Positions 6,065 through 50,207 of a stretch of 64,000 bases of DNA are shown piece by piece. The DNA is taken from positions 370,371 through 434,370 of the forward strand of contig NW_002060959.1 of NCBI RefSeq assembly GCF_000150275.1. Direction: 5' to 3'. A program made the translations under genes and the position numbers. Every line of letters starts with the position of its first letter. Within the stretch, counting starts at the first letter, position 1. Origin of the DNA: Trichoplax adhaerens (lineage: Eukaryota; Animalia; Placozoa). The notes below the pieces were generated by a model. It made no database searches. It was not told the origin of the DNA and was given only the letters and a program-made list of their open reading frames with translations.

Positions 6065-9000
6065 ATGAAAAATGAAAATATTCAATCTCTACGCCAACTG
6101 GGATACAAGGCTTTACGATTAGGACACTATTGCCAAGCTCAGAGCCATTACATTGCTGCCCTTAATATCATTAATAGCTTAAAGACTGATCGTATCGTCG
6201 ATAAAGAATTAGAATGTGATCTTTATCTTGATGTTTCCATAGTATTAGCGAAACAACTTCATTTACTTCAAGCTCTTGAATATTGTCAACGATCGCAAAA
6301 ATTAGCTGGAGCAATAAATGATCAATATCGCTTAGCTAAATTGTTGGATAACCAAGGTAATATTAATAGGTTACAGGAATTATTTCAAAAAGCACTAGAC
6401 AGTTACCGTGCAGCTCTTAAATTAAAATTAAAACTATGTAAGAGCTCCAATTTAGATATTACAGATACATTTTACGGCCTAGGACGCGTATATTATGATC
6501 AATCTAAATTTAACGATGCTTTATGTATGTATCAAAAGGCTAAAGATATTCGATTACAGATATTAGGTGATGATAATCTAGAAATTGCTGAATTATATTA
6601 TAGCATTGGTAATGTTTTAGCTCAGCAGCGGAAAGATGAAGAAGCATTATCTATGCATAAGAAATCTCTAAACATTCGCATAAAATTACTAGAGAAGAAG
6701 GATTTAGAGATCGCCACATCGTATCAAATGATCGGTTTAGTATATATGAATCAACGCAAAATAGATGATGCTTTACTAGCTTATCAACAGGCTTTGGATA
6801 TTCGAATTGAAATGAAGAATGATAGCTGTGTAGAAATTGCTGAATCTCAAGTTAGCCTTGGTGATATTTATTATGAGCGAAGTCAATATAAAGATGCTGA
6901 GGCAAAATATCGCATTGCCTTGGGCATTTATACCAAATTATTACACGAGGATAATCAAAATCTTTATATGGCTAGACTATTCAATAAAATTGGCAATATA
7001 TTCTTTTGCCAATATCAGTTCAAAGAGGCATTATCATCGTATCAAAAGTCTCTTAATATTCGATTACATGTGCTAGGAAAGACTTCCTTAGATGTATCAG
7101 ATTCATACGAAAAAATTGGTTGCCTCTACATTAAGCAAGTAAATTTCACTGATGGATTATCGATGTTGTACAAAAGTTTAAGCATTAGATCGGAAATAGT
7201 AGGTAATGATAGTCTGCAAGTTGCGGATTCCTACTTTAATTTTGGAGCTACTTATTACAAAGAAGAAAAGTTTACTGATGCCCTGACTATGTTTCAAAAA
7301 TGCGTCGATATTCAAATTAAAACATATCGAGAGCTTACTTTCGATATCACTACTGTCAATCACGCAATCGCTACAGTGCTTACTGGCCAAGGTAATTATG
7401 AAGATGCCTTGGCATTACATACAAAATGTTTAAATTTTCGATTGAATAAATTAGGTGAAAGCCATCTTGAAGTAGCTTTATCATATGACAAGATTGGCGA
7501 TGTTTATTGTCATCAATTAAAGTATATAGAAGCTATGTCCATGTATCGAAAGTCTTTAAACATTCGTCTGGCTCAATTAGGAGAAAATAATTTAATTATT
7601 GCTGAATCATACGATAACATAGGCAAAATTCATGAATGCCAACATGATTATGATTCGGCATTATCTATATATGAGAAGTCTTTAACTATACGTTTGGAAA
7701 TGTTAGGAAAACATAATTTGCTGGTTTCAAAATCCTATGACGATATTGGCAATGTCTGTCGGTTATTATATCATTATCCAAAAGCTATAACTGCATTTCA
7801 ACAATCACTCAATATTCAAAGTAAAGTTTTAGGGAAGGACAAAAGCGCGTGTAAAAATGCCAAGGTTTCTCCATCTGGTAGTGGAAATGAAGACTTGGGT
7901 AAAAAGCTAACCTCAATGCATGAAGTTATCGCATCAACTCTACGAATGATTAGGTTACAATTGATCGATGTTGATAACATAGGCATCTATCGATCTTATC
8001 GTAATTTTGGGGTGGTTCGCTTAGCTGGAACTAAATATGAGAACAGTTTATGCCTGTTTCAAAAATCACGAAATGTTCGATACCAAATATGGGGAAAAAA
8101 CCGTCAACATTATTATCTTTCGTGCCGGCTTGAAAAAAATGATGATCATTCGCGCACAGAATATCCTAACACTCTTTCTCAATATCAAAGAGCATTGCAA
8201 ACACTATTAAAGAACATTGAACATGTTGATGTATCTGTGGCTAATTCATGCGATTACCTCGGTAACATTTGTGAGAATATCTATCGATGTACGGATGCTT
8301 TATCATTATATCAAAAATCGCTTGAAATTCGCCAGCAAATATTCGGAGAAAATCATAATTTAGTAGCTAATTCGTATGACAATATTGGATGCATCTATTG
8401 CAATCTATCTAAGTATGAAGAAGCCATAGGCATGTTTAATTTCTCTTTGCGTATTCGACAGAAAAAATTAACAAATATTAATAATATGCGAATAGCTGAG
8501 TGCTACGGAAATATTGCTCACGTAAAGTTTATTTCGTTTTGTTACAAAGATTCTCTTACCATGTTTGAAAAATTCTTGGAAATTATGTCAACCGTACTTG
8601 ATGGACACCATATCAGTACAGCTGATGTCTATAATAATATCGGAGTAATAAAATATCATCTATCAGATTGTACGGAAGCATTAAAGGATTATCAAGCTTC
8701 GCTAGACATTCGTTTAGCATTACTTGGCAGTAATCATCGATATGTTGCAGATTCATATTATAATATTGGCATGGCTTATAGATATGAGCGCCATTATGAT
8801 AAAGCGATAGAATCACTTCAGAAATCGGTCAATATTTACACACAGTCTTTAAGACCTAATCATAGGCAAATTGTCGATGTTCGCCGTATCATTAAAATAA
8901 TGAATCGTAAATATTCTCCAAAAACATCAAAATCTAAACTGAATATCATATCCAAATTTGTTGGTAATAATGCTCGTCAGCATTACCAAGATTTATCCTC

Positions 9001-10499
9001 GACTATTCAATCTTCGGTGCAACAAGCTGATAATTTTCCAGGTAAGGACAATTAATGGCATAATTTATAATACAAGCATGATTTGATTTATGTAAAGTAA
9101 TTTTTTATGTCATGATACTGAATTTTAACTTTACTGAAAATGATAGAAAATGAAAACATAACGTCTTCCAATATTAATGAGTCAAATGCTAGCCAAGCCG
9201 AAGATGGCAAGTAGATATACTGTAACTTACTCTTAAAACCTTTTCTTATAAACTAGCACAAAATTTATTTCCCGGTAAGTCCAATGTGTGGGCATATAAC
9301 TCAAAAACGATTAATAAGAACAAAATAATTTTTTTGCAGATGAAATTAAGCAATCAACAGTGAATGGAGAACATACGGTAAGCAATACAATTGCTGTAAG
9401 GCATGATTAATTGATTATTGAATAACATACTGTTAGGCATTCAATCCCTTTAATGTAACTAGGAAAAAATCATACTGTAGTGTTACTGTCCCTAGAAAGA
9501 TGAATTTTATTATTTTGAGTGAGTAATTCCCTATAATGGCAGGCAGAAAGCAGTTTACCGTAAATATGCTTCTGAGGATAATACCGACAGGCTAAAATTT
9601 TTAGGAAATTTACTACAATTCCGGCATATTCTAGTTTTGTTATTACTAGACCAGTTTAAAGCTGTTATGAATCTACTAAAAGTAATAAGTATGCTTCTTT
9701 ATATTGTTTTGTAGAAGGTACCAGTATATAATATCTTACTGTATCTCAATCATGTTTATGTAAAACAGCTATGTGCATAATTGAATTAAATATGATACAG
9801 TCTATAAGTGCTTAGCCTTATTTAATCTAGGACAGCAAACTACTTCCGAATTGTTAACATATCTTGCTTTACAATATCATAATTTATAGATATTTCGATA
9901 CGCTGGTTATTTATTAGTGCTATTTGTGGTGCCTTATTCGCATGTTAAGCTATCCTAAGACAGACTTATATACTAAGACAAAATTGCAAATAACAACCGG
10001 CACTTTAATCGCAGAGCAGTAGTCATCATGCTATAAATCCATTCAATATTCTTTCGCAAGCTTTGAGCTTTATCCTCTTCGCAATAATAGAAGCGCTTAG
10101 TAAAACCTTACACAATTCATGATGCCAGGGTAGGTTAAACCTACTAACGCACTCATATTTAAAGAAAACGATCGAAAATAGAAGGATAAATTATTATAGT
10201 CTAAGATTTCAAAGGCGAAGTTATAAAAAATTCGTTATTCGTCTTGTTCTGTACTTATAAACATTATAGCAATACATTGACCTATGATAAATTTCTTTCT
10301 CATAACAATATTTACTCCAATTTAGATGATTTTAATTTAATTTGATTTAAAAGTAGTATTGCTAATTGAAAGGTAATTTCTGCTATAATATACGATTTTT
10401 AGTAGTATATCAAATGCCTGAAATTAGTTTTTATTCATAAATTATCTCTTTTAGGACTCCATAAACGATCAAAGTTCCAAAATATGTGTTATACTATAG
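6065..10499 (+). CDS. TPR protein 1 (42-aa KLC/NPHP3-type TPR array) with spliced CaaX tail; exons 6065-9041, 9147-9206, 9340-9377, 10455-10499
   Basis: 996-aa ORF with repeats of A.SY.NIG..Y..Q.KY..AL..YQKSL.IR...LG. Donor CAG|GTAAGG at 9041/9042. Tail exons encode ENENITSSNINESNASQAED / DEIKQSTVNGEHT / DSINDQSSKICVIL*. The last two exon sizes (38 and 45 nt) and phases match TPR3. Confidence 0.85.
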
Positions 10500-16561: not shown

Positions 16562-17719
16562 ATGAATTCTTCGCGTGGTAATGGCCTTGGTTATGGTCAT
16601 GGAAATATGGACCTAGGAAATATGAGTCATGGAAATATGGGTATAGGGAACTTGAACCATGGAAATATGGGCCAAAGCAATAGGGGCCAAGGACATATGG
16701 GACATTCATCACATAATAATTCTACCATGAATATGACACATATGATGGCCACTCAATTACCACCCGATATAGTGATAGCCTTTATTACCTTAACTTTATT
16801 AGCCTTTATAGGTTTCATTATTAATGCTATCCTTGTTATCATCGCAATTCGTAGTAATCGCAAGAAAACCGCAGCTGATGGTCTTGTTGCACATTTATCT
16901 ATCTGTGATCTATTAACGACTATACCAACATTAAGCTACTGCTCAGTTATCTTCGTTTTTCGTGGTTTCGGTTGGCCAACGCAATTGATGAATATATTAT
17001 GTAAAGCAACTATTTTCTGCCTCACTTTCTTCTATTCTTTAACCGTAAGTACTTTAACATTAATGTCTATAGAGCGATATCGTGCTATCATTCATCCGAT
17101 GAAACCTCGTGTTTCTAGAAAGAGCTTGTGTATCCTATTAGTATTTATGTGGCTGTTAGTCGCAATCATTCCTGCCTTAGGCATAAGAAATACTGCCGTT
17201 GATCCTCATAGCGGATATTTATGTGTACTAGAAGATGCACATCAGCATTATATCGTTGTACTTAATTTCAGCTACTGTGTGATTATTGGCTATATCATAC
17301 CAGCTTGTATTATGTTGTATTGCTACAGCAAGATTATTAAAAAATTGAAACAATCATCCTTAACTAACAGAGAAAGCTTAAGGATAGAATCTCAACGCGA
17401 ATTTCAAAAGAAGCGTGCTATCAAAATATTAATGGCGGTTTCTGTAGTGTTTATTTTGACTGGTATTCCTTTAGTTATCGGCTTGATTATCCACATTTAC
17501 ATGGATAGCAAACTATCTCAGTTGACACATTCCGATCACGGTCTGATCAATAGTTTAACATTGCTATTTTGGATACTCTTGCAATTTGCTCCTCTTTACA
17601 ATCCTATTATTTATTTCGCCAAGAAGAAAAATTTCTGGCAAAATTTTAATCACAAGACTGATCCAGTTTTACATGTAAGTCAGACTGTAACAGCGATGAC
17701 TCATTCAAATGCTAAATAA
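16562..17719 (+). CDS. Class A (rhodopsin-like) GPCR 1, 385 aa, with His/Met/Gly-rich repeat N-terminus
   Basis: Seven hydrophobic segments. N1.50 (GFIIN), LSICD, SIERY, TM4 W, ECL2 Cys, TM5 P..Y and NPIIY are present. Single coding exon. Confidence 0.95.
   Translation: MNSSRGNGLGYGHGNMDLGNMSHGNMGIGNLNHGNMGQSNRGQGHMGHSSHNNSTMNMTHMMATQLPPDIVIAFITLTLLAFIGFIINAILVIIAIRSNRKKTAADGLVAHLSICDLLTTIPTLSYCSVIFVFRGFGWPTQLMNILCKATIFCLTFFYSLTVSTLTLMSIERYRAIIHPMKPRVSRKSLCILLVFMWLLVAIIPALGIRNTAVDPHSGYLCVLEDAHQHYIVVLNFSYCVIIGYIIPACIMLYCYSKIIKKLKQSSLTNRESLRIESQREFQKKRAIKILMAVSVVFILTGIPLVIGLIIHIYMDSKLSQLTHSDHGLINSLTLLFWILLQFAPLYNPIIYFAKKKNFWQNFNHKTDPVLHVSQTVTAMTHSNAK
16577..16705 (+). repeat. Coding 15/30-bp tandem repeat encoding (H/x)GNM(G/x) pentapeptides
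   Basis: CATGGAAATATGG occurs exactly at 16598, 16628 and 16658, with degenerate 15-bp units between. Confidence 0.9.
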
Positions 17720-24488: not shown

Positions 24489-24490
24489 AT

Positions 24491-26749: not shown

Positions 26750-27817
26750 ATGGACTCTTTACTTGTTTACAGCCTAAGATCGACGGATCGTTCTTCGCTA
26801 AATGATTCTGCTATGAATATGTCAGGGATAAATGACACGATGATCATGCATCTACCTACCGATATGTTGATTGCATTTATTACAATAACTTTATTAGCCT
26901 TTCTAGGTCTAACGATCAATACTATCCTCATTATTTTGATGAGCTACAGAAAACATACGAAAACTGCAGCTGATGGTTTAGTTATTCATCTGGCAATCTG
27001 TGATTTATTAACAACCATACCGACCTTAATTTACTGCCCAATAATTCTTGCTTTCAATGGTATTGGTTGGCCAATTCATATCATGAGCAGGTTGTGTAAA
27101 GGAGTTATTTTCTGTCTAACTACCTTCTACTCGGTAAACGTAGGTACACTAACATTAATGTCCATCGAGCGATATCGCGCTATCATTCATCCAATGAAAC
27201 CTCGTATTTCTGGCCCAAAAATGGCTGTATTAGTAATATTTTTATGGCTATCAGTTATTATTGTTCCAGCTATTGGAGTAAGTAATACTGAAGCCGATCT
27301 CCGCACCAGGTATTTATGTGTATTGCATGGTGCACATCAGCATTTTGTAGTTATCCTCAATTTTAGCTACTACGTCGTTGTAGGTTACATTATACCAGCT
27401 TGTATCATGTCATATTGCTACAAAATGATTATTAAAAAATTGAAACAAACATCTTTAGCCAACAAGAATAATTTAAGGATTGAATCAAAACGCGAATTTC
27501 AAAAGAATCTTGCTGTTAAAATTTTAATCGCTGTCTCTATAGTCTTTATTTTAACAGGTATTCCTTTGGTTATTGGCTTAATTATTCATATTTATATGGA
27601 TACTAAACTATCGCATTTGACACAAAATGATCGTAATATTATTAACAGTTGCACTATACTATTCTGGATACTCTTACAATTTGCTCCTCTATATAATCCT
27701 ATGATACATTTGGCCAAGAAGAAAAATTTTTGGCATACACTCTACAGTAAAAATAATCGCGTCTTACCAATTAGTCATAGTACGTCACCAACATCTTGTT
27801 ATGGTCTAAAGATTTGA
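26750..27817 (+). CDS. Class A GPCR 2, close paralog of GPCR 1
   Basis: 7TM. Shares KTAADGLV.HL.ICDLLTTIPTL, SIERYRAIIHPMKPR and FILTGIPLVIGLIIHIYMD with GPCR1. The first ATG is at 26750; the track start at 26729 is TTG. Confidence 0.95.
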   Translation: MDSLLVYSLRSTDRSSLNDSAMNMSGINDTMIMHLPTDMLIAFITITLLAFLGLTINTILIILMSYRKHTKTAADGLVIHLAICDLLTTIPTLIYCPIILAFNGIGWPIHIMSRLCKGVIFCLTTFYSVNVGTLTLMSIERYRAIIHPMKPRISGPKMAVLVIFLWLSVIIVPAIGVSNTEADLRTRYLCVLHGAHQHFVVILNFSYYVVVGYIIPACIMSYCYKMIIKKLKQTSLANKNNLRIESKREFQKNLAVKILIAVSIVFILTGIPLVIGLIIHIYMDTKLSHLTQNDRNIINSCTILFWILLQFAPLYNPMIHLAKKKNFWHTLYSKNNRVLPISHSTSPTSCYGLKI

Positions 27818-34841: not shown

Positions 34842-36377
34842 GACATTTATTTAATTATTTGTCAGTAGCTACTTTAGTAATTATAGTTTCACGTTGTATT
34901 AATCATGATCATACGTTTATGTATTCATTTCTTAATCGATCGTTGCGAAATATAGAAATTAATGCATCAATCTACAAATTACCTTGCCTTTTATCAGCCA
35001 GGTTCACTTGGAGATTTATTTTAATACAAGATGTATTTTTACGTTACTAAATTTCTATTTATTTATATTCATATGGCAAATTGAAATTCATTTAGATATT
35101 AATAGACATTGCATATGAGATGTGCTGTTGTTTTGCATAACTTTAATCCGTCAGAGCTTGTTCGAAATTCATAGATATCTAGAGTGCACCGTAGCATGAT
35201 GTTTGGCTAATTGATTGCTACCTGAGCTTTGATTAATTGAAGAGATGAAAAAAAGTTCACCGACTAGCTATTTCATTGAGTAATATGATTTTTAACGGAA
35301 GCTTATTCCTATTAGGTAGCCACATATTGAACCGAGTAAAAATAGAAATTGCAGTTCAGATCAGTGCATTAATTATCAAATTATAAACACTGATTCATTA
35401 CTGCAAATATAAAGATTCTTGATGCGAATTTATTGATTGATTTTGCTATTGGAATTTCTTAAACAATTAATGTTGACAATTAAAGTATAGAACTATTAGC
35501 ACTATTTTTTATTAATAAAGTTTAAACTTCGATTAAGTACGATTTTAACCGAATGATATCAGGCTTAGAGAAGAAAGAAAAAAGTAAACCTTAGCGAAAA
35601 AATTTGATAATACGGCTACTAATGGCAATATTTATGGAAATACTTGATGTAACCAATGTTTACCGCCTTCATTACGTATAAAGCATATTTAATTTCCACT
35701 TCGACAGAAATTTTTAATTACAGAAAAAGCTTTCCACTGAATAAAACAACAACTATAACTATTGAAAACTTAATTGGATCCGTCAGGAATTTATTCAAAT
35801 TATATTAAATGACATTGATTTTATCAGTTACTAATCGCCATAACAACCATTAAACTAGCACCGTCAATATGTCATTGTATAGAGTATAGAGTAACTTGAA
35901 TTTGTCTCGCCTATTATTTATGATTATTGACAGCTCTAGAAGCAATCAAGATTTCATAATTACTAAAAGAAATAAGATAATAACTCAATTACGTATTTCT
36001 CTGTATTCCTGTATCAGAAACAATAAGACTGCATAATCTGACAATTTTCGAATTTTTTTGTTCAGAATGAAACATTAAAAGTTAATTCTTTTCGTAATGC
36101 ACCATCAGTCAATTTCCAGGAAGATATTGCACATTTTTGGACACAATATATGTCAGCTGGCCGAAGTAATTAGATAGAATTATGGGCAAAATCACCATGA
36201 TTATCCACGGTAACAAGCACAGTGCGGCAATCAGCAAACTATTTAGAGGACTACCGGAGTTTTAGTAGTATCATTAACCAAAATTATCATTTAACGTAGG
36301 CAAAGCCTCTAAATTCGAATTAAGATTTCCTAAACTTTGAAATTCCTGACTTTAATACCTGCTTTAGAAATATATTA

Positions 36378-39300
36378 ATGGTAAGATATCAGTAGATATA
36401 CTATATAGTTGAAGATTTGTGATCTGCTATTCCATTGTAATAAGTTAGTAAACATTTCTTTACAGGATTTCCGAAAGATCCTTAACATAACGGAATCGAA
36501 AAATCAAGATAATGATCAAAGTTCCCTTGAAAGGATTCAACAACTGAGGAGTCTCGGCGTTAGTGCATATCGTGATGGGAATTATAAGCAAGCAAGGCTA
36601 ATCTATATGCAAGCACTAGATATATCTTATAACATAACGAACAACGATACTGGACGAGATGGTTTACAATGCGATCTTTATCTCAATATTTCTGCTACCT
36701 ATCGAGAACAGCATCAGTTAACTCAAGCACGTGAAATAAGCGATCGGTCTAAGAAGATTGCTATTGAGCTAGAAGATCAAATTCGCCTGGCGTTGTGTTT
36801 AGATGATCTTGGTGAAATAAGTAGAATGCAAAAATTGTATAAGGAAGCATTTCAATGCTATGATGAATCTCTAAAATTGAAATCGGAAATATCCAATGGT
36901 GAGAATATGATGGTTGCGGATAGTTATTACGGCATAGGCAATGCCTATTTCGATCAATTCAAACTTAGCGATGCTCTATCTGTGTATAAAAAATGCCTCA
37001 ATATTCGATCAAATGTTTTAAATATTGAAAATCTAGACATTGCTGAGGTATTACATAGTATTGCTAGTATTTATGCGGCAGAGTTTAAATTCGAAGATGC
37101 GTTATCTTTGTATCAAAAAGTTATTGATATTCGATTGAAAGAGTTGGGCGATTGCAGCTTAAAAATAGCTTGTTCTTATGACAGTGTAGGACAAGTTTAC
37201 TTGAATCAATGTAAATATGATCAGGCATTATCTATATTTGAGAAATCTCGAAATATTCGTTTGAATATACTAGGGGGTCAAAGTATGGAAATGGCACAGT
37301 CCTATTGTAACGTGGGAAACATTTATACTGCTCTATGCAGATATAATGAAGCTTTAGTAATGTATAGGAAATCGCTCAATCTTAGACTGGAATTCCTTGG
37401 TAGTACTCACGTAGAGGTGGCCAATCTTTATTGCAATATTGGAAATGTTTTAATCCAACAGTTTGAATATCGTGAAGCCATATCTATGCATCAAAATGCA
37501 CTCACAATTCGACTGCAGTTACTGAATATCAATAGTATAGAAGTAGCTGATTCCTATAATCATATTGGAAGAATTTACTCAGAACAGTTGAAACATGAAG
37601 ATGCCTTATCTTATGCTCGAAAGTCTTATGATATCAAAGCAGATATTTTAGGAAACAATAATATTTATGTGGCCCAATCTCTTTATAGCATAGGAAATAT
37701 TTATAATCGCCAATCAGATTATTATAATGCTCATTTAATGTATCGAAAATCTCTAGATATACACTTACAATTATTCGAAAAGGACCATTTATTAATTGCA
37801 ACTTCATACAATAATATTGGTCATAATTTTTTGAGTCAATTTAAGTACGAAGAGGCTATAGAAATGTTTGAAAAAGCTTTGAAGATCCGATTGCAACTAT
37901 TAGGCGATAATAATCTACAAACTGCTCAATCATTTAACTACATAGGCCTTGTTTATACCAGACAATCTAAATATAATGAAGCCTTATTAATGTTTGAAAA
38001 GTCCTTAGCTGTCAAATTAGTTACGTTAGGACGTACCCATTTGGAAATTGCCGTTTCCTATGTCTATATAGGAAATATCTATTCATTACAATCGAGATAT
38101 GAAGGTGCCTTAGCCATGTATCAGAAGTCTTTAAATATCAGAACTGAATTATTAGGGAATAATAATTTGTTGGTGGCTGCATCTTATAATAGCATTGGAA
38201 TCATATTTTCTCATCAGAATAAATACGACGATGCTCTCATAATGCATAGGCAATCGTTAAAGATTAGATCGGAAATTTTAGGTAGTACAAACTCGAAAGT
38301 AGCGGAATCGTTAAATGATATTGGACTTATTTACTGCTATCAATCTAAATATGAAGATGCTTTATCAGCATATCAGAAAGCTTTAAAAATTCAATTAGAG
38401 GTATTACCTCAGGATAGCTTAGAAATAGCTACTACTTATAATCATATAGCAACGATCAACAATTTACAATCTAAGCATGAAAATGCACTTTTGATGTATG
38501 AAAAGTCTCTATACATTCGAGTAAAACTATTAGGAGAAAATAGTTTACAAGCAGCGGAATCATATAGCGATATTGGTAATGTTTACACAAATCAGTCTAA
38601 ATTTAATGAGGCCCTATCTATGTTCGAAAAATCGCTAGAAATCCGTTTGAAAATATTACCACGAGATCATTTAGATATCGCGATGTCTTATGCCAACATT
38701 GGAGTTATCTTTTCTCATCAATCAAAATATAACGAAGCCTCTGCTATGTATCAGAAATCTTTAGATATTCGACTAAAAGTATTAGGCGATACTAACATCC
38801 ATACAGCTTCTTCTTATGGAGATATTGCATTAATACATTGCTATCGATCACAATATGATAAAGCTCTAGCGACGTATCAGAAATCATTGGATATTTTAAA
38901 GAAAGTATTAGGCAATTATAATATCCATGTTGCTAATTCCCATCATAATATCGGTAATGTATATAAAAAGCAGCATAAGTATCAAGATGCACTGAGTAAC
39001 TATAATGAATCACTTACCATTCGTAAAAAGATATTAGGTGATAATCATGTGGATATTGTTGGCTCCTATACAAATATAGGGGATGTTTATTCGTTACAAG
39101 CGGATTACGACGAAGCTTTAACAATGTATAATAAAGCATTAACGATACAATTAGCTGTACTTGGAAGTGAAAATCTAGAAGTTGCAGTTTCATTCGAAAA
39201 CATCGGCGATGTTTTCTATCACCAGCACAGATATGCAGATGCATTGATAATGAGTAAAAAATGCTTAGCTGCTCGATTAAGCATTTTCGGCGAGAATAAT

Positions 39301-40345
39301 TTAGAAGTTGCAGATTGCTATAATAATATAGGCAAAATTTATTGTAGTCAAAAAAAATATGAAGAAGGATTGTCCATGTATCAGAAATCATTAAATATTC
39401 GTTTGGAAATTTCAGAAGAGAACAATTTGGATGTTGCTGATTCCTACAATCGGATTGGACAGGTATATTGTCACCAGCATAAATACGTTTATGCGCTGGA
39501 TATGTATCATAAATCACTTCAAGTTCGACTGGAAGTATTGGGAGAAGAAAATTTACAAGTTGCCAATGTACAGAATAAAATTGCTAATACCCACTTTCGC
39601 TTAGGCCAATTTAATGATGCCCTAAATATGTATCAGAAATCGCTTAATACACGAAAAAAGTTGTTAGAGGATTGCCATATAGAGATACTTAACTTATATA
39701 CTAATTTGGGTAGCGTTTACAGGAAATTATCTAAAGTTAAAGAGTCTATAGCAATGTATGAGAATGTTCTCAAAATCCAAATTAAACTATATAAACGGAA
39801 AGATTCCAGGATTTCTAATACTCAGGAGATTTTAGCGAGATTGAAGCAGAAGCAAAATACTTCTTCATTTCCGCTTGGCCAGTTATCCTCTATAATCCGA
39901 TATAATATCGGACAACGTTGCACTAGTCAACCTCAAACCTCAACTGTTCAAATCGAGTCTGCAATTAAATCACAAGGTTTAATTTCCATTTTATAAAGTA
40001 GTGAGATGATTGTCCAGACTAAACGATAAAGGATAAAACTGTAGACCTATTTGCTTTATAGCTTTATAATAATTTTATATTTCTCATTTTTAAATTTCTG
40101 TAAGCAGAATGTACGACGGAACTACACAACGAAAGATGCCAAGCAGAAGAGAACACTCTGAGTAATGCTAGCTTTGATCTCTAATTAATTTATTGATCTA
40201 TTTAATTGGCATAATTTCAAACATTAAGATCAAATACTAGCAAAATGTGGATTTATGATAAAGGCTATAATTGTAATAGATTGTATTAAATTCCATTTCA
40301 CTTATAGATAATAATGGTATACCGGCTTATAATCCTGGAAGAATG
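36378..40345 (+). CDS. TPR protein 2 (longest array); exons 36378-36380 (ATG only), 36466-39976, 40108-40161, 40308-40345; last exon unresolved
   Basis: ATG|GTAAGA donor and TTTCTTTACAG acceptor are in frame; the track start at 36409 is TTG inside this intron. Long 42-aa TPR array. Tail exon with CQAEE (SQAED in TPR1) and a 38-nt phase 1-0 exon, as in the paralogs. Confidence 0.8.
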
Positions 40346-40417
40346 GTAAGAATTATTCAGGATTTTCCTATAGAAATGCTTTTGGTAATAAACAAAATTG
40401 TATACTAGTGAACTAAT

Positions 40418-40866: not shown

Positions 40867-43800
40867 CTGTAGTTGGTGTTGTATGCAAAGAACTATTCAG
40901 ACTTAATTAAAGATTTCATCGAGAACGCAATTTAATTTTTTAAACATTGACTATAGATGCAGTAAAATCTTTATAAAAATTGGATGCTGGGATCATTGTA
41001 AATATATATTATCTCATAATGTCCTGCACGTCCTTGCTGCTGCCAGAGAAGAACAGGGATGTGTGCCGTTTCTAAGTCTGAAAAATTTTACCTTTCTATC
41101 TTAATCATTCGTATCATAACTATTTAGGGATTAGTGTTATCTACTAGTTTACAGTAAAAAATCTTTAATCATATATACTAAAGCACCCTAAAAAACTAAT
41201 TTCTCACTGAAACGTATCATGTTAATCTCTGATGACTACGGTCCTGAATCTGCACCTGTCAATTTATGGAATCTTCCTTATATCTTATTTTGATTTAGTT
41301 ACTATTATAGGAATGTGTCTTTTTAGTTTGCTCCTTATTGAACTCAATACATACTGCTGATCTAATTGTGAGTTTCATTTCATGAAATATAGAAAAATAG
41401 AAAAACGCGAGAATCAAGATTATGTATAATGCAATAGGTAAAAAAATATTTCAACATTCTAGCAAATTAGTTGATGTAAGTTTCAATCCTGCAAGATTTT
41501 TCAATATATCTTAGTTGAATGTAATTGTTAATATTAAATTTAACAATATTTATAACTTAGAGTTCTGATCTCCAAATGCAAAAGCAATCAATACTTAGCC
41601 GTCAATTTCAAATGGCCAAGACTAATTATTTTGTTATAATCTTGCAATATGGGTTCATAACGATGGTTTAGTTTATAACAAACAAATTTTGTATTATACT
41701 ATATCAATATTAGACGTTAGATACGAAAATCAATTGATTAGGAACAATTTCTATACTTGAGTTTTAATTCTTATAGTAATAAAATTGATAATTTGACGAA
41801 ATGTGCACTAATTGATAAAGTTGCAATTTCAAGAGCATTATTTCCTAAAAACGATTCAAATTTTATTCTGACTAAGTTACTTGGGATACTCAAATATGAT
41901 TCAAGTGTAGCCTAAAGATACAATAACTGATTTCTGAATTTAGATATAAAAATTTTCAGATTCTAAATTATTAGCCGAGTAACCATCAACGTATTTATAA
42001 ACTAATATCTTAGTATTTTCAATATAATCCCATATTTGTTACAAATTTCCATAAATGAAATACAAATTTGGATACATGTTAAAAGACTTAGTTTCTAATT
42101 AAGGATTTTGTAAAAGTTATTATATTCTCTTTTTATTGAAACCTTTAAAGAAATATTGAAGTTGTTCTCTTTTAATTATTATAATAAAAGATATTATACT
42201 GATATCGTACTCGTTAATATTTAATTTATCGCGGAAAGACGACATAAAGGATGCAGTATTTGAAATAAGAACGTTACATATATTATTGAAAATTAGATTT
42301 GCCTCAATTAATAATTCCGTCACTAAGGTGATACTAACTGATCCAGTTGCCTAATTAAGTTAATTAGGCTAATTTGGTATTTTTGTGATGAAAGCTGTTC
42401 ATTTATGCACCTATTTATTAGTTTAAACAAGTCAATTCTAATAGAATGACGAAGAATAAGTTCTATGGAATATTGCCATTTTTCCTCGAACGAAAATAAA
42501 TGCAGTATAGTTCCGTTTGTTAGGTTTTTAGATAGTAGTATGTAGATATCATGGTAGTAGTAGCGAATTCTTCCTGACTTTTACCTAGAAGTTGGGTTGA
42601 AGCCTATGACAATAGCCAACTTAGCTTCTTTATATTCGTTTAATTTAGTTGTTGTTAGGAATAAAGACGATATATAACAAAACTACTACTCAATTTTTTC
42701 AATCCAGAATTGTTACAACTGTTATTGCAACACAGCCACTCTTCACTTAACTCATATTATAGCATGTAATAGTGCTAATTAAGATTTTAACTATGCTGCT
42801 ATATATCTTGCTAGAGGTCTATGCAACTCATCTTAATGGCAGGAAAGGAAACTCAAGCAAAATGTGAATTAAGGTATAAATAAAAATAATTCAAGGTCTA
42901 CTGTATCATCATGTGGTATACGGCCTTAAATATAAGTTTAGATGCAATTAGTCTAATTTTTTTTATAGTAATAAATGGAAAAAATATTAATATTCTTCAA
43001 AGTATACTTTTTGTAATAATTTAGGTAAATTTGCTGGCAAATAATGGCATCAAAACTCAACTTTACTATCGTATTTTTTGTAATCAATAACGTTGTAAAA
43101 TTAAAACTGTGCTACATGAATAGATGGAAATACATTAGTATTTTTATTTATCGCTGTACGTATAATATAGGATTCAGAAAACTATTTAAATATCGCAAGA
43201 ATCGAAATAGAATGATATCGTATTTGATGTTTTTGAGAAATAACCTGCTTAGGAAGAAAACTGAAAAGATATTTCTGAGCAGCAGCAAATGAACAAATAA
43301 TCTATTGGTAGATAGTTCAATATGTATAGTGATGATTTTCTTAACAATATGGGATTGCAATCCTCCTTAGAAGGTGAGATATTTAAACGTACAATAAAAG
43401 GTTCAGTGATGAGTATGTATTCGCCGCTGTCAGAAAGAAATTAGATCTCGATCCTTTATAAAATATTGATTGATATCTGTTCTTTGAATAGGTTAAAAAT
43501 GTCAACAGAAACTGATACTTATTGTTGTCATTCATTTTATATTACTTTATTCCATTATAAATAATTACGCCGTTAAAGGTGAATTATTAATAATCTCTTA
43601 CGGTAACGGAAAGAAATAGCATAATTATTTAGCTGTATAGAACTACTTTAATTTATATTGATACTCGATTAGTATATACCTTATATATAGATTCCGGTTA
43701 TAAGGATATCAATCCCATTTAGAATTATAATTTGAAAATATAGCGTATTGTGCTAGTATACATACAGCGCTTATAATAATATTGAACATTTAGTTCGTAT

Positions 43801-46496
43801 ATTGACTTGGCATTTCACTGGTTTATAACAATTAGGGACTATGGAAGCTATTTTGATCATGTCACTTTCGATATCTTAAGACCATATTTTTAATTAAGCT
43901 CTAGTTGAAATTAAAATTTAATCGTACTAAAATTGCAATGCGATTTGATAAATATAAGTAAAACCAATTAATCAATCAAGCAGCCAATCAATCGATACTG
44001 CTTTTAAATATAAAATTGTTCAGATTTTTAAGAATTTCCCATATTTCTATGATATTTGAATTCTATCCATTGATTAGATACTTTCAATTTTCAATTTGTA
44101 CTGAAAATTTAGGGAGGGTTTTTAGGAACATGCTAAAAGAATAGCTAGCACTTGCTGCAATTTAAATTTCTATTTGCTAGAATTCATTATCATCCATATA
44201 TAAAAGATTTTGTTCTATTGTTATAATACATTAAATGAGAACATACCCGATATTGTAGAAATAAGGGAATATCTACAACAATATCGATTTAATGCCGTTA
44301 TGATTTAGAAGAAAAATAACAACTGGAGTAAACTAAACAATTTTTTAGTTCTCCTTTTTATATATTCCAATAATGTAAAATTACTACGTGTATATTATTA
44401 TTAGAAATGTGTAGAATATTTAAGAATTTTAGCGGATTAATAATCTATCCATTTCATACCTCATTTTTGCGATGAATTTATTTAACTTTATTTTGACTAA
44501 TTAATTATCAGTTCTGTAATTGGTATTCAAAAAGACTATCCTATTCCTAATTTATGAATGATATAAGGTCATAACAAGCAGGCTAACATTTGTTTTGCAT
44601 TTGAATCATTGTGTGTAGGTATACAAAGTCTTATATAGCACAATAATATTGTTATGTAGATGATAATAACCAAAGTACGTAATTAGTGATAGTTTCAGTT
44701 CAAATGACGCTATTAAAACTATGGTGCAAAATTATCTATTGAATTATTTTATTCGGCTACAGTCAGATTAAACTTCATCCTATTGCTAAGCTTCATATAG
44801 CTACATATTTTAACAAACATCTATCTATAAGATATTAGACATGCATAAGATAGGCAAGTATTCTAAAGGTGTAACAATGTGTTCAATTACTATTTCATTC
44901 TAAATACGTAATAAATTACTGTGAACACGAACGAAAATATCTGATATTTAAGGCTAATAAATATTTATTTGTTTTTAAAAGCTATAATGTAAGTTCTAAT
45001 GTTTTTACAGGAATCGAATAATTGTGTAAAACACTATTATTCTGTTTTAATAATGTTACATAAAGTATTAAAGGTATTTTATGTATAGATATAAAATATT
45101 AATTGATTTGATAATTCTATTAAGTAATAAACTAGAATAAGAATAATTGTCTATAATCCATGGAAAGATCAATAGGGAAAACTGTCACGAAACTATTATG
45201 TTTAGGTCATAACAAACTTACGAATAAATTTATCCTTCTGATTGGCATTACTTAAAATAAACAATTGTTTAGGTGAAATAACTGTACATGGAAGCAATTT
45301 ATTGCTAGTTATCTTTTAGACTTAAAATTAAAATGGCCCTTTATTATTACTATTTGGGTGGAGGGACAACGTTCCAATTTCTTTGATACATTTAAATCTA
45401 CTCTGAGAGCCATTATTTCATATAGTAAATTATTAAGTTTATAGGTTTATAAAAAACATACTTAGCAATATTTTTATCGGATCTTATTCAATCTGAATCA
45501 GAATGCTGACGATGAAATGGCAATAATTCAATTACTACCTTTCAGCGATTTACATGAAAAAAGACTTAATCCTATGTAATCTATACTGTAACGGAATGTT
45601 TAATTCTTCAACACAGTCGTATATTTAAACCCTAGGTAAAATATGTACTGTGTTATTGACTTTGTGTAGTCTTACTATAGTTATGACGTCCAAAGGCAGA
45701 AACTTCCTGCTCATTAGTTACAATGTCGTTATGAATGGAAAATGATTGTCTTTTCGTTATTTTAGGTATTTACAATTATCGTCATGGTAATCTCATCTTA
45801 ATTCGCCACTTTATAGACGTTAATATTTATTTTTATAAAGTATTGTTCCAGGTGTTAATTATGCTCTGATGAATAATTTATATGAGGTAGAAATAATTAC
45901 TTTCATCCTTTGCCTGGTGTATATATATATCTTCTAAAGAAATGAAAGTTTGCCATATGCAGTTTGCATTAAAAGATGAAAGTTAGGACTTACATTCTAT
46001 GCTAATATAAGTTGCAATTCCTAATTTCAATCTGTGAAATAACTGAAAGTCACATTGCAATGTTGGTGGTGTAAGTATTAATATCCATATCCACAGAATA
46101 CTATTTCGTTATCCTATCTATTACCTGGTTTGGGTTGTTCTACAAAAGTCAACAGAATTAATCTTAGAAAAGATTTCAACAAATTTGATTGCAAAATTAT
46201 CAGCATCACCAACTTTAAACTTGAAATTTACTCTCAAAGTCAACTGAAATTCATTTCATACATTGATTCTATGTACTTGTGCAAGTGATTATCAAAATTC
46301 GCATCATTATTTTAATAGAATAATTTTTATTTAGTCTATATCTCTATAAATGTTTTAAGATTTATTTTTGTTAATTGCGTTATCGAAACTACTATTCGAT
46401 ATCACTTACTATCGCTTGATATTTCATTCGCGTGTCGCCAACATAAACCAGTTGAGATTCTATTCAGCTAAGTAATCGACCAATCTAAGGAAGAAT

Positions 46497-49400
46497 ATGG
46501 ACACAACTCTAGAGTCGGTAAAGGATGAGATTCATTCTTTTTGTCTAAAAGGTCATCAGGCTTTTAGTCAGGGATGTCATCATCAAGCTAGATCACATTA
46601 CATGGAAGCAATGGAAACAGTAAATGGTTTAGATAGCGAAAGCATTGATCAAGATCGACTACTATGTGATTTGTACATCAATATATCATCAACTTTCCGA
46701 GAGCAACATCAATTAGTTCAGGCACTAAAATATTGCGATCTGGCAGTCAAATTAGCAGAAAGAATGGACGATCAAATCCGATTAGCAAGGTGTTTCGATA
46801 GTTTAGGCAGTATCAATAGAAAAAATGGAGTGTATGAAGAAGCATTAGCCCACTATGATAAATCGCTTGTTATAAAATTAGAAATTGTCAGTGAGCATAG
46901 CTTAGATGTTGCTGATACCTTTCATGGAATAGGAGAAGTTTTCTTCATCCAATCTAAATTTAAAGATGCTTTATCTATGTATAAGAAATGCTTAGCAATC
47001 CGATTAGATCTACTGGAAAAGGATCATTTATTTGTAGCTGAAGCTTACCAATCTATCGCTAATGTCTATGCTATACAGTATGAATACGAATACGAAGATG
47101 CTCTTTCTCTATATCAGTTATCTCTTGATATTCGATTGAAAATGTACAAAAATAATAATTTACTCATTGTTCAATCTTATAACAGTATTGGTCTACTTCA
47201 TTTCTATAAATACAATTATGAATATGCTTTAGCGATGTTTAAGAAATCTCTCAGTATCATTAACGAATTATCCATGAGCAATAATATCAATAGTACTCCT
47301 ATCTATGATAATTTGGGTAATTTATACTTTCATCAGGGCAAAATTAAAGAGGCATTATCTCTATTAGAAAAATCACTCCAGATTAAGATTGAAAATCTAG
47401 GCAATAATAATTTAAGTATAGCAATTACTTACAATTACATTGGAAATATTTATCATTATCAATTAAAACACAGCGACGCTATATCAATGTTTCAAAAATC
47501 GCTTAAAATTAAACAAGAAATCTTAGGAAATAGTAATATTGAAATAGTAAAGTCATTGGATGGCATCGGTAACGTCTATTTGTATCAATTTAAATATAAA
47601 GAAGCACTCTCTATGTATCAAAAATCGCTAAAAGTTACTTTGGAATTATTAGGAAGTAATACTTTAGGTAGTGCAAGATCCTATGCCAATGTTGGACTTG
47701 CTTATTTTGCACTATCCAAGCGCGCTGATGCTTTATTAATGTATCAAAAATCTCAAGATATTTTATTGGAAGTTTTAGGAAATGACAATATCCATATGGC
47801 ATATTCCTATTTATGCTTGGGACTCGTTTATTATCAGCAGTTACAGTATCATTCTGCTCTATCGATGTTTGAAAAATCATTAAAAATACATATAGAAATT
47901 TCAGGTCATGATGCATTAGAGGCAGCTTCTATGTATTATTTTATCGGACGTCTCTCTATCGATCAACAAAAGTATCAAGAAGCTATTTCAATGTATCAAA
48001 AATGTTTACACATAAGATTAGAAAAACTGGGAAATAATCGATCAGAAATTGCTGATATTTATTATGCTCTCGGTTTAATCTATTTCCAACAATTGAAATA
48101 TAAAGATGCTCTATTTATGTATAAGAAATCATTAAATATTCGCTTAGGAATAGTAGATAATAAAAAATCTCCAAGCGATGAAGTAAATAATAAAATAGGT
48201 ATCACCTACCAGCATCGTACTAAATACCAAGAAGCTCAATTATTGTATCAGGAATCTCTCAACGAAGGATTCGAAATTTTAGGAGATTATCGTTTAGGAG
48301 TTTCTTCTCTCTATTATGATATTGGACTCATCCATACCAAACAGTTTCAATATCAAGATGGCTTGAATATGTTTCGAAAATCGTTAGCAATTCAAATTGA
48401 AGTATTAGGAACCGATAATCTAAATAATACTAAGCTACAAGAAATAATGGGGCTATTATATAAATATCAGTTTTCATATGAAGAGGCTTTGCATATGTAT
48501 CAAAGTGCTTTCCATATTAGATCAAAACTGTTGGGTAATAACAGTTTAGACGTAGCTAAAAATTATCTAAATATTGGAAAACTACACTGTGATAACTTTA
48601 GATATCTAGATGCTTTAACCGCATTTGAAAAATGCCTCCAAATTCAACAGCAACTACTAGAAGATAATCACATCGATATTGCCAATACTTTTAATTATAT
48701 TGGGAGAATCTATAAGTATTTACTGAAAAGTAAAGAATCTTTGAAGTACTATGAGAAAGCTCTAGACATAGCGTTAGATACAGCAGGTAGTAAAAATCTT
48801 CATGTTGCTGAATCGTATCATGGACTGGCAGATGGATATTTTATGCAACATAAATTTAAGGATGCATTATCTAATTATACAGAAGCTCTCAACATTCGGC
48901 TAGAAATAGTTGGAAATCAAGATTTAGCGGTAGCTCAGTCGTATTATGCTATCGCTAACATTCATTTTTATCGATCCAAGTATAGGGATGCCCTCTCCAT
49001 GTACCATAAATCTCTAGATATTGTAACTAAAACTTTAGGAACTAACAATTTAACTGCTACCATCATTTATAATGGTCTTGGAAATGTATACGCTAGACAG
49101 TCAAAATATGAAGTTGCTATATCAATGTACCAGAAATCGATCAAAATTGGAATAAAATTAATGGGATATAATTATAACTTGATTCTAGCTAATTCATATC
49201 ATAATCTTGGATTAGCTTACGAAGATCAAAGCAAATATGCTGATGCTTCTTTGATGTATCAAAAATCTCTCGATATTCAACTACAAATATTTGAAATCAA
49301 TCACCCAAATGTTCGCGAAACAAATGATATCATTTCTAGTTTAAATCGCAAACTGATGCAACCCAATTCCTCAGCTAGTGTAAGCCAAATATCAGTTAAA

Positions 49401-50207
49401 ATTCGAAACAGAGTTCGGCAGCGTGGTTCAATCTACCTCTATTTATCTGGTGTTCCGGCCTATCCAGCAAAAGGTTCAGGAAAATAGAAATTGTTAAGAT
49501 TGATTTATTAAGTAGCATTTATCACCAAATCTTTTTTCGAGTGACTGTAATTCTTATGATCTATATTCGTTTAATCTTTGCTTTTACTGATCATGCCAGC
49601 CGACAAAGCCGTAATCTTACCCAATTCCGAAAGAATTTGCGATCGCAATAGTTTTAATATGGCAGGTGAGTAAATCAATAATACATATTTAAGTTTTAAA
49701 ATTACAATTTATTAGAAATTCAATTAATGATATCCCTGAAATAGGTTAAAGAGTTTAACTTTACCACTGCAATAGATATATACTTTTTGAAAATTATTAA
49801 GCAATCTTTTTCCGTTTCGTGTGTACAATGTAGATGAAAAGCAGTCAGCGGCTGATCATGGTTCAGGATTGGTTAGAAATCTATATCTAAGCTTCATTTA
49901 CTTATTTTTAGTTAGACTATATGCAACTGTTGATTTAAAGCGATTAATGGCAATCGGATGGTAGTGTAGTAGCCTTTTAAAATAGTTGCCATATAACCAA
50001 AAATTGGTTATAGACGATTAAAATAAGCTCAAATGCCAGTTGTTTAGATTATTATTTTTATCTTACTATAATTTTGCAACTATAAGATAATGATCTTGGC
50101 AATTTATAAAATTAATCGCTACTTCTTCAGATAACACACATCGATTTTCTTTTGTTAATTAGAATGTTGATATCAGAACAAAAACCAGAATGTGTATGAT
50201 TCAATAG
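46497..50207 (+). CDS. TPR protein 3 with spliced CaaX tail; exons 46497-49473, 49600-49665, 49834-49871, 50163-50207
   Basis: 996-aa TPR ORF. Tail exons encode ADKAVILPNSERICDRNSFNMA / DEKQSAADHGSGL / NVDIRTKTRMCMIQ*. Strong CAG|GTGAGT donor at 49665. The 38- and 45-nt exons match TPR1. Confidence 0.85.

What the first reader, a model, noticed from the sequence alone, without database searches (positions are those of the whole stretch)
6065..50207. Clustered giant TPR proteins carry a hidden micro-exon tail ending in a CaaX prenylation box
Seen: all three TPR ORFs have a phase-1 donor just before the apparent stop, then a 54-66 nt exon and an exactly 38-nt exon (9340-9377, 40308-40345, 49834-49871; DEIKQS vs DEKQS in TPR1/TPR3). 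TPR1 and TPR3 then have an exactly 45-nt last coding exon with Cys at the same position: DSINDQSSKICVIL* and NVDIRTKTRMCMIQ*. Exon size, phase and Cys position are conserved while most residues differ, which suggests selection on the CaaX. A basic, potentially amphipathic segment after the repeats is also shared (ISKFVGNNARQ / LSSIIRYNIGQR / ISVKIRNRVRQR). Known: CaaX directs prenylation and membrane attachment. Inference: a family of lipid-anchored, rapidly diversifying TPR solenoids with no signal peptide or catalytic domain, possibly membrane-facing intracellular sensors or scaffolds. Single-exon gene models would miss this feature. I cannot confirm that it is undescribed.
Basis: partly seen in the sequence, partly recalled or inferred. 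Interest (0 to 1): 0.85.

Follow-up and report, generated by a model that had tools for sequence, protein, structure and literature searches.

The report
TPR proteins with spliced lipid-anchor tail
Three neighbouring genes of the simple animal Trichoplax encode very long TPR-repeat proteins whose true ends, written in three tiny downstream exons (RNA-confirmed for one gene), carry a classic lipid-attachment signal, so these scaffolds are probably tethered to membranes, which the public gene models I could reach do not show.

Summary
The window comes from Trichoplax adhaerens (TPR1 matches TRIADDRAFT_60705).

**Gene structure.** It holds three same-strand paralogues made entirely of TPR_12/TPR_10 repeats. 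Each giant exon ends at a phase-1 donor and is followed by exons of 54-66, 38 and 45 nt.

**RNA evidence (TPR3 only).** Spliced RNA contigs from three independent studies join 49473|49600, 49665|49834 and 49871|50163 exactly as predicted. One 3.5-kb contig spans the whole mRNA. A DNA-like run shows no joints. TPR3 therefore ends ...TKTRMCMIQ*.

**TPR2.**

**TPR1.** It ends ...SSKICVIL*, but its second exon needs a GC donor. Neither TPR1 nor TPR2 could be checked against RNA.

**Chance.** These are the only three AG-flanked 14-residue frames ending Cys-aliphatic-aliphatic-X in the whole window, on both strands.

**Distribution.** Eighteen other family members show no such tail.

**Prenylation.** It is inferred, not shown. 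The genome encodes ICMT and three prenyltransferase beta-subunit loci.

**Verdict.** This is a new variant of a known kind: a CaaX anchor on an all-TPR solenoid. Function is unknown and interest is moderate. The scan has noted CaaX tails on other Trichoplax repeat proteins elsewhere in this genome.

The parts
6065..9041 (+). TPR1 giant exon (992 codons plus 1 base). All TPR_12/TPR_10 repeats. Ends at phase-1 donor CCAG|gtaagg.
   Evidence: Matches TRIADDRAFT_60705.
9147..9206 (+). TPR1 candidate exon 2 (60 nt, ENENITSSNINESNASQAED). Needs a GC donor (GATG|gcaagt). The JGI model uses an 18-nt exon at 9257-9274 instead. Both lengths are multiples of 3, so the downstream frame is the same.
   Evidence: Not tested on RNA.
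9340..9377 (+). TPR1 38-nt exon (DEIKQSTVNGEHT). Also used by the JGI model.
10455..10499 (+). TPR1 45-nt last coding exon, DSINDQSSKICVIL*. CaaX = CVIL (geranylgeranyl type). Acceptor tctcttttag|.
   Evidence: Predicted by homology with TPR3; no RNA check.
36409..39976 (+). TPR2 giant exon (open frame; true start codon unresolved). Ends at phase-1 donor CAAG|gtttaa.
40108..40161 (+). TPR2 exon 2 (54 nt, ECTTELHNERCQAEENTL).
40308..40345 (+). TPR2 38-nt exon (NNNGIPAYNPGRM).
41393..41437 (+). TPR2 45-nt last coding exon, KNRKTRESRLCIMQ*. Polybasic stretch plus CaaX = CIMQ (farnesyl type).
46408..49473 (+). TPR3 first exon: 5'UTR from at or before 46408, ATG at 46497, 992 codons plus 1 base, donor AAAG|gttcag.
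   Evidence: RNA contig X6 record 23 is colinear over 46408-49471.
49600..49665 (+). TPR3 exon 2 (66 nt, ADKAVILPNSERICDRNSFNMA).
   Evidence: Joints 49473|49600 and 49665|49834 in RNA contigs of X10, X5 and X6.
49834..49871 (+). TPR3 38-nt exon (DEKQSAADHGSGL).
   Evidence: Joints in three RNA runs.
50163..50571 (+). TPR3 last exon. Coding part 50163-50207 (45 nt, NVDIRTKTRMCMIQ*, CaaX = CMIQ, farnesyl type). The 3'UTR then runs to at least 50490-50571.
   Evidence: Joint 49871|50163 in three RNA runs; contigs run on to 50490-50571.

Best explanation
The window carries a tandem, same-strand cluster of three old paralogues of a large Trichoplax family of intron-poor TPR_12/TPR_10 (kinesin-light-chain / NPHP3-type) solenoid proteins.

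**Structure.** In this small clade the giant repeat exon does not end at its apparent stop. A phase-1 donor a few codons upstream splices to three micro-exons of 54-66, 38 and 45 nt. These add a hydrophilic, probably flexible tail of about 45-50 residues. The tail ends in a CaaX box: CVIL in TPR1, CIMQ in TPR2 and CMIQ in TPR3.

**Shown.**
- The exon structure and the mRNA of TPR3.
- The conserved exon sizes, phases and Cys position in all three genes.
- Prenyl-processing genes are present in the genome.

**Inferred.**
- After translation the Cys is prenylated, with geranylgeranyl for -CVIL and farnesyl for -C(I/M)(M/I)Q.
- The last three residues are removed and the Cys is carboxymethylated.
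- Together with the adjacent basic residues (5 K/R in TPR2 and 3 in TPR3 within the ten residues before the Cys), the lipid holds a roughly 1000-residue TPR scaffold on the cytoplasmic face of membranes. The tail would act like a Ras-type hypervariable linker.
- The solenoid most likely serves as a membrane-tethered protein-binding platform. What it binds is unknown.
For: - **RNA.** Three studies' contigs join 49473|49600, 49665|49834 and 49871|50163. One 3502-nt contig covers 46408-50490 spliced. The DNA-like run X1 shows no joints.
- **Same architecture in all three genes.** Phase-1 donor, an exon 2 whose length is a multiple of 3, a 38-nt exon and a 45-nt last exon ending in TAG. Cys sits at -4, aliphatic residues at -3 and -2, a hydrophobic residue at -5 and a basic residue at -6. 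The remaining tail residues differ.
- **Against chance.** Only three AG-flanked 14-aa frames ending C-ali-ali-X exist in the 64-kb window on both strands, and they are these three. The base rate of such endings is 0.5%.
- **Domains.** Pfam finds TPR_12 at 358-628 bits and no other domain type.
- **Machinery.** The genome has an ICMT locus and three prenyltransferase beta-subunit loci.
- **CVIL.** Human GGTase-I fully geranylgeranylated it in a yeast reporter. In the same study GGTase-I left the -Q box CAHQ (DNAJA2), described there as strictly farnesylated, unmodified (PMC11152559).
- **Donors.** The verified TPR3 donors are non-consensus (gttcag, gttaga). The weak TPR2 donor gtttaa is therefore not a concern.
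Against: - No lipid attachment, localisation or binding partner has been tested.
- The TPR1 and TPR2 junctions are unverified. TPR1 exon 2 needs a GC donor. The homologous GT four bases downstream would shift the frame to an early stop.
- The JGI model of TPR1 ends in a different last exon without CaaX.
- No transcript-derived protein for TPR1 was found, so it may be weakly expressed.
- CMIQ and CIMQ themselves were not found in any prenylation data set I could read.
- No orthologue from another placozoan genus could be reached, so conservation rests on paralogues only.
- In run X5, short contigs lie in TPR3 intron 3 and cross its acceptor unspliced. A minor non-CaaX form cannot be excluded.
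Confidence: 0.62

Rival explanations
1. The spliced tail is real, but the terminal CxxX is not a working prenylation signal. The proteins would be soluble cytosolic TPR scaffolds, and the Cys would be kept for another reason (for example a disulfide or metal contact, or a degron) or by descent alone.
For: - No biochemical evidence here.
- CMIQ and CIMQ are not in the data sets I could search.
- TPR1 has no basic patch beside its CaaX.
- A more distant relative, TRIADDRAFT_54078, ends in the atypical CDVQ.
Against: - All three boxes fit the canonical C-aliphatic-aliphatic-X rule, with X = L or Q.
- Cys is the only invariant tail residue across paralogues that are 31-34% identical.
- Position -4 is kept exactly, by a fixed 45-nt exon ending in a stop.
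- CVIL is a proven full GGTase-I substrate (PMC11152559).
- The enzymes are encoded in the genome.
Confidence: 0.2
2. Only TPR3 makes the CaaX form. TPR1 (and perhaps TPR2) is a decaying or differently spliced copy whose look-alike exons are relics no longer joined in frame.
For: - The canonical exon-2 donor of TPR1 is lost. The aligned GT gives a 64-nt exon and an early stop.
- TPR1 has a degenerate repeat stretch and the lowest TPR score.
- No transcript-derived TPR1 protein is in the collection.
- The JGI model chooses another end.
Against: - The 996-codon TPR1 frame is intact.
- Every exon-2 option (60 nt with GC donor, the 18-nt JGI exon, or skipping) keeps the frame into the 38-nt exon.
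- The 45-nt exons of TPR1 and TPR2 are intact, with good acceptors and canonical CaaX.
- A neutral relic would not be expected to keep an open 14-codon frame ending in CaaX after this much divergence.
Confidence: 0.15
3. The tail is a switch. Regulated splicing or intron retention produces both an anchored (CaaX) form and a free form ending at the unspliced stop. Human OAS1 p46 is one such splice variant with a CaaX end, and from memory ZAP-L/ZAP-S is a comparable pair.
For: - The CaaX lies on separate terminal exons.
- The unspliced frame has a stop 4-7 codons after each donor.
- X5 contigs at 49950-50191 cross the intron 3 acceptor unspliced.
Against: - No contig in the three RNA runs covers TPR3 intron 1. 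The spliced contigs carry the main depth.
- Contigs cannot show minor forms, and the intronic pieces may be pre-mRNA.
Confidence: 0.1

Closest known systems
[quoted passage not shown]
   Same: A TPR-containing, non-GTPase protein ending in a prenylation box. WDTC1 is listed among the evolutionarily conserved predicted farnesylated families (PMC1847700). That ASG2 is farnesylated is from my memory.
   Different: In WDTC1/ASG2 the WD40 propeller dominates and there are only a few TPRs. They form a single conserved orthologue group and the CaaX is not on micro-exons. Here the protein is a solenoid of about 20-28 TPR_12 units with nothing else, in a lineage-specific clade.
Nephrocystin-3 (NPHP3)
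   Same: The repeat type matches: Pfam TPR_NPHP3 scores 191-301 bits against a cut-off of 100. UniRef names TPR1 'Nephrocystin-3'. NPHP3 is also a lipid-anchored TPR protein.
   Different: The NPHP3 anchor is N-terminal myristate and acts together with coiled coils (PMC6678300). The window proteins start MKNEN/MDTTL with no Gly2. Pfam found no domain other than TPR repeats, and the anchor signal is at the C-terminus. They are not orthologues.
K-Ras4B / Rho-type polybasic-CaaX tails
   Same: A flexible, variable linker, then a run of basic residues directly before a CaaX box (TPR2 KNRKTRESRL-CIMQ, TPR3 IRTKTRM-CMIQ). Paralogues differ in farnesyl-type versus geranylgeranyl-type X.
   Different: The cargo is a 1000-residue repeat scaffold, not a small GTPase. 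TPR1 has no basic patch.
OAS1 p46 (and, from memory, ZAP-L): innate-immune sensors given a CaaX by a terminal exon
   Same: The prenylation box is supplied by 3'-terminal exon choice, and it places a cytosolic protein on endomembranes (PMC8357416, PMC7612834).
   Different: Those are enzymes or RNA sensors with proven alternative isoforms. Here no alternative isoform and no ligand are known.
Trichoplax NB-ARC/NACHT-TPR NLR-like proteins
   Same: They carry TPR-type (or WD40) C-terminal repeat arrays and show lineage-specific expansion: 42 NOD-domain genes in Trichoplax sp. H2 (PMC6321704). Earlier scan notes report CaaX ends on some of them; I did not check those.
   Different: The window proteins have no NOD domain. 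The TPR3 mRNA contig shows no upstream exon.

Membership tests
CaaX-type prenylation substrates | Cys exactly four residues from the C-terminus of the mature mRNA's reading frame | tested here: met
   TPR3: RNA-confirmed frame ends CMIQ*. TPR1 CVIL* and TPR2 CIMQ* follow from the conserved exon chain, which is not RNA-confirmed.
CaaX-type prenylation substrates | a1/a2 aliphatic, and X of the FTase class (S, M, Q, A, C) or the GGTase-I class (L, F, I, M) | tested here: met
   V-I-L, I-M-Q and M-I-Q. CVIL was fully modified by human GGTase-I in a yeast reporter. GGTase-I left the -Q box CAHQ unmodified, and that box is described there as strictly farnesylated (PMC11152559).
CaaX-type prenylation substrates | Prenyltransferases and the post-prenylation methyltransferase are present in the organism | tested here: met
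   Three PF00432 beta-subunit loci and one PF04140 ICMT locus, all over the cut-off, in G000. The alpha subunit and Rce1 were not searched.
CaaX-type prenylation substrates | Covalent isoprenoid on the Cys, and Cys-dependent membrane association | not testable with these tools
   Needs labelling or localisation experiments.
TPR_12/TPR_10 repeat proteins (Pfam PF13424/PF13374) | Multiple repeats scoring above the curated cut-off | tested here: met
   TPR_12 scores 358, 628 and 422 bits (cut-off 30.1) with 10-15 matched stretches.
Nephrocystin-3 orthologues | N-terminal myristoylation site (Gly2) and coiled-coil domains before the TPRs | tested here: not met
   The N-termini are MKNEN and MDTTL. 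Pfam finds only TPR families. The NPHP3 features are as described in PMC6678300.
NLR / STAND NTPases with TPR sensor | Central NB-ARC or NACHT NTPase domain | tested here: not met
   No P-loop domain in any of the three ORFs. The TPR3 mRNA contig starts 89 nt before the ATG with no upstream joint.

The most novel reading that the evidence does not exclude
This clade could be a placozoan-specific class of lipid-anchored, NOD-less TPR receptors or decoys. They would share the repeat type of the expanded NB-ARC-TPR repertoire but be posted permanently on membranes. Paralogues would be sent to different membranes by anchor type (geranylgeranyl versus farnesyl plus basic patch). That would make a membrane-surveillance layer of an early animal's intracellular immunity, or of its dealings with symbionts.
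Probability: 0.12. Interest if true: 0.65.

Novelty: new variant of a known kind. Interest (0 to 1): 0.45.

Why it matters
Prenylation decides where a protein works.

- **Annotation.** A CaaX box hidden on 38- and 45-nt exons is missed by single-exon or ab initio models. The TPR1 public model has a different end, and I found no TPR3 model. The placozoan prenylome and the localisation of this large TPR family are therefore likely misjudged.
- **Biology.** A 1000-residue all-TPR solenoid on a lipid anchor is a combination I did not find described. The same genome seems to put CaaX tails on several other repeat and death-fold proteins, according to earlier scan notes that I did not check. This hints that membrane tethering of scaffolds is a recurrent theme in this early-branching animal.
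- **Limits.** CaaX anchoring itself is textbook, the function of these proteins is unknown, and the tail is limited to three genes.

Tried and rejected
1. **Whole-protein word search with TPR3.** Repeat words swamped it. It gave only distant TPR proteins, and neither TPR3 itself nor a close relative appeared.
2. **C-terminal region searches for TPR1.** They returned only the JGI model and no transcript-derived fragment, so there is no RNA proxy for TPR1.
3. **Exhaustive phmmer of TPR3 against 1.84 billion representatives.** The best hit is TPR1's model at 34% identity. No orthologue or model of TPR3 was found. Among the 270 proteins fetched, only four have Cys at -4.
4. **Genome-wide generality.** I scanned 104 kb downstream of 18 other family members for AG-flanked CaaX-ending frames. 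Nothing comparable turned up. Apparent hits were a 443-nt repeat shared by two loci, a 115-nt tandem repeat in L042, and frames without usable acceptors.
5. **First bulk fetch of 20 paralogue regions.** About half of the roughly 35 family loci were therefore not examined.
7. **Prenylation data for CMIQ and CIMQ.** Not found.
8. **Tree attempt.** A treekit run gave no answer. A FastTree run on the first 300 residues replaced it.
9. **Joined exon models.** Exons were joined only inside local scripts to read the frame.
10. **NPHP3 orthology and NLR membership.** Both were considered and rejected; see the membership test.


Full report
**What the window is**

The window is AT-rich (GC about 0.30) and comes from an animal genome. 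It holds single-exon rhodopsin-type GPCR genes and three very long open frames on the + strand. TPR1 is the JGI gene TRIADDRAFT_60705 of Trichoplax adhaerens. Its BLAST identity is 97.6%, with 21 fewer residues spanned in the model (974 against 995). This confirms the organism named by earlier scan notes. The window is G000:C1398:370371-434370.

**The proteins**

The three frames are 6065-9055 (996 aa), 36409-39996 (1195 aa) and 46497-49487 (996 aa). All consist of TPR_12/TPR_10 repeats (358, 628 and 422 bits against a cut-off of 30). There is no other kind of Pfam domain, no P-loop and no hydrophobic N-terminus.

They belong to a large family of intron-poor TPR genes. About 35 loci in this genome have open frames of 740-1675 aa. 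A FastTree tree on the first 300 residues groups TPR1-3 together, but only weakly (support 0.63 and 0.77), and on long branches of 0.6-0.76 substitutions per site. The pairwise identities measured are about 31-34%. These are old duplicates.

**Checking the observation**

Each giant exon ends at a donor that leaves one base: TPR1 CCAG|gtaagg at 9041, TPR2 CAAG|gtttaa at 39976, TPR3 AAAG|gttcag at 49473. Then come an exon of 60, 54 or 66 nt, an exon of exactly 38 nt, and a last coding exon of exactly 45 nt ending in TAG.

It is at 41393-41437, behind the acceptor gaaatatag, and reads KNRKTRESRLCIMQ*. The three last-exon peptides are:

| Gene | Last-exon peptide |
|---|---|
| TPR1 | DSINDQSSKICVIL |
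| TPR2 | KNRKTRESRLCIMQ |
| TPR3 | NVDIRTKTRMCMIQ |

The Cys is the only invariant residue. Positions -3 and -2 are always aliphatic, -5 is always hydrophobic and -6 is always basic.

As a chance control I translated every AG-initiated frame in the window on both strands. Of 4765 frames that end after 4-60 residues, 24 (0.5%) end C-aliphatic-aliphatic-X. Exactly three of those are 14 residues long, and they are the three predicted exons.

**RNA evidence**

I laid Logan contigs of four public runs on window:45900-50700.

- Three runs from three different studies each carry one contig with three joints: X10 (on record as RNA-seq), X5 and X6. Each joint is GT..AG and skips 126, 168 and 291 bases.
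- After the stated cut shifts the joints fall at 49473|49600, 49665|49834 and 49871|50163, exactly the predicted junctions.
- X6 record 23 (3502 nt) is colinear with 46408-49471 and then spliced through to 50490. TPR3 is therefore a four-exon mRNA with an 89-nt leader and no upstream coding exon.
- X1 covers the introns contiguously with no joint and behaves as DNA. This serves as a control that the joints are not genomic deletions.
- In X5 two short contigs (49950-50191) lie in intron 3 and cross its acceptor unspliced. This may be pre-mRNA or a minor form.

For TPR3 that test is answered in favour of splicing.

**What is not confirmed**

TPR1 has a weak point. Its exon 2 (9147-9206) needs a GC donor (GATG|gcaagt). 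The GT aligned with the verified TPR3 donor lies four bases further on and would shift the frame to an early stop.

The JGI model uses an 18-nt exon instead (9257-9274, donor CCG|gtaagt). It then uses the same 38-nt exon and a different last exon (9715-9780...VKQLCA*), which has no CaaX.

All exon-2 options have lengths that are multiples of three, including skipping the exon altogether. The CaaX frame therefore depends only on the 38-nt and 45-nt exons.

Two targeted protein searches found no transcript-derived TPR1 protein. Expression may be low.

The TPR2 start codon is also unresolved. The frame opens directly after a TAG at 36406-36408, and its first Met lies inside the conserved head.

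**Distribution in the genome**

I read the DNA downstream of 18 other family members, 104 kb in all. None has an AG-flanked CaaX frame comparable to the three here.

Several of them do have a good donor just before the apparent stop (CAG|gtga, CAG|gtaac). Small 3' exons may therefore be a family habit, but with other ends.

About half of the family could not be fetched. Among the loci sampled, the CaaX tail is a feature of this three-gene clade and not of the whole family.

**Existing annotation**

The exhaustive phmmer search of 1.84 billion cluster representatives found no protein closer to TPR3 than TPR1's model, at 34% identity. The collection therefore holds no TPR3 model and no close orthologue.

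The TPR1 model has a non-CaaX end.

A full-text search for Trichoplax with CaaX returned lamins, GRKs, Rho GTPases and others. Nothing in the listed titles and abstracts concerned TPR proteins. The placozoan innate-immunity survey describes 42 NACHT/NB-ARC genes with TPR or WD40 repeats and does not contain the term 'prenyl'.

**How it most likely works**

*Shown:* the gene structure and the TPR3 mRNA.

*Established knowledge:* a C-terminal Cys-aliphatic-aliphatic-X is the substrate motif of FTase and GGTase-I. The X residue selects the enzyme, and prenylation is followed by -aaX removal and carboxymethylation.

- CVIL was completely geranylgeranylated by human GGTase-I in a yeast reporter. 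In the same study GGTase-I left the Q-ending box CAHQ unmodified, and that box is described there as strictly farnesylated (PMC11152559).
- The genome encodes an ICMT locus and three prenyltransferase beta-subunit loci.

*Inferred:* TPR1 is geranylgeranylated, and TPR2 and TPR3 are farnesylated.

- The basic residues next to the Cys in TPR2 and TPR3 add electrostatic membrane affinity, as in K-Ras4B.
- The hydrophilic tail of about 45-50 residues acts as a flexible tether.
- The result is a long TPR solenoid on the cytoplasmic face of membranes, most simply a tethered protein-binding scaffold.
- Its ligands are unknown. Any link to the neighbouring GPCR genes or to the NB-ARC-TPR repertoire is speculation.

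**Comparison with known systems**

- WDTC1 (WD40 + TPR) is a conserved predicted farnesylated family (PMC1847700).
- NPHP3 has the same repeat type but is anchored by N-terminal myristate together with coiled coils (PMC6678300). The window proteins fail that membership test.
- OAS1 p46 shows how a terminal-exon CaaX relocates a cytosolic sensor (PMC8357416, PMC7612834).
- The window proteins are not NLRs, because they have no NOD domain.
- I found no description of an all-TPR_12 solenoid with a CaaX end.

**Verdict**

- It is a new variant of a known kind and of moderate interest.
- The scan has noted CaaX ends on other Trichoplax repeat or death-fold proteins on other DNA: Apaf-1-like, NB-ARC-TPR, ankyrin-only and armadillo proteins. 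I did not check those notes.

**Procedural notes**

- Joined exon models were translated only inside local scripts and were not sent to any search or fold tool.

Noticed in passing
window 36300-36420: The TPR2 start is unresolved. The open frame begins right after a TAG at 36406-36408, and its first Met (residue 66) lies inside the conserved head. An ATG|gtaaga sits only 28 nt upstream of the tatatag acceptor-like site, which seems too short for an intron. An upstream 5' exon is likely.
   Followed up: partly
window 16562-17719 and 26729-27817 (+): Two single-exon rhodopsin-family GPCR genes (7tm_1, E 6e-36 and 5e-32) lie between TPR1 and TPR2 on the same strand. Whether this interleaving means anything is unknown.
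   Followed up: no
window 838-2271 (+) and 60600-61524 (+): Exons of a DUF4735 gene lie at 838-1308 and 1702-2271. An Ig-domain exon followed by a weak hormone-receptor-domain (HRM) match lies at 60600-61524, possibly the ectodomain of a secretin- or adhesion-type receptor.
   Followed up: no
L049 (G000:C1412:690634-695958, - strand) and L050: TRIADDRAFT_54078 (P0173, 1564 aa; H2 orthologue RDD42787.1) joins a related TPR head to a roughly 790-aa C-terminal domain. That domain has at least 25 paralogues in the genome. The protein ends, on a small last exon, in a basic patch plus CDVQ (RRSVSIRARRYCDVQ*), an atypical CaaX-like end.
   Followed up: partly
P0019, P0026 (unnamed ENA/Logan assemblies): Two TPR_12 proteins of about 1190 aa carry precomputed NACHT / NB-ARC / AAA hits and end in ...ILNCILF, a GGTase-type CaaX.
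   Followed up: partly
L033, L035-L038, L041, L048 (other family members): Many other family genes have a strong donor just before the apparent stop of the giant ORF (e.g. TCACCAG|gtgatttg, TCATCAG|gtaactt). They too probably continue into unannotated small 3' exons with unknown ends.
   Followed up: partly
L045 and L046, about 1.7-2.1 kb downstream of the two C1392 paralogues: A 443-nt stretch is 92% identical between the two loci while the surrounding DNA does not align. It is probably a mobile or repeated element, not an exon.
   Followed up: partly
window 49950-50191: In run X5 two short low-depth contigs lie inside TPR3 intron 3 and cross its acceptor unspliced. They may be pre-mRNA or a minor intron-retaining form, which would end without CaaX.
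   Followed up: no
window 49633: The RNA run of 'organism B' (X10) and the DNA-like run X1 read T for G at 49633. By my codon count from the listing this turns Arg into Ile in tail exon 2. The 45-nt CaaX exon shows no difference in any run.
   Followed up: no
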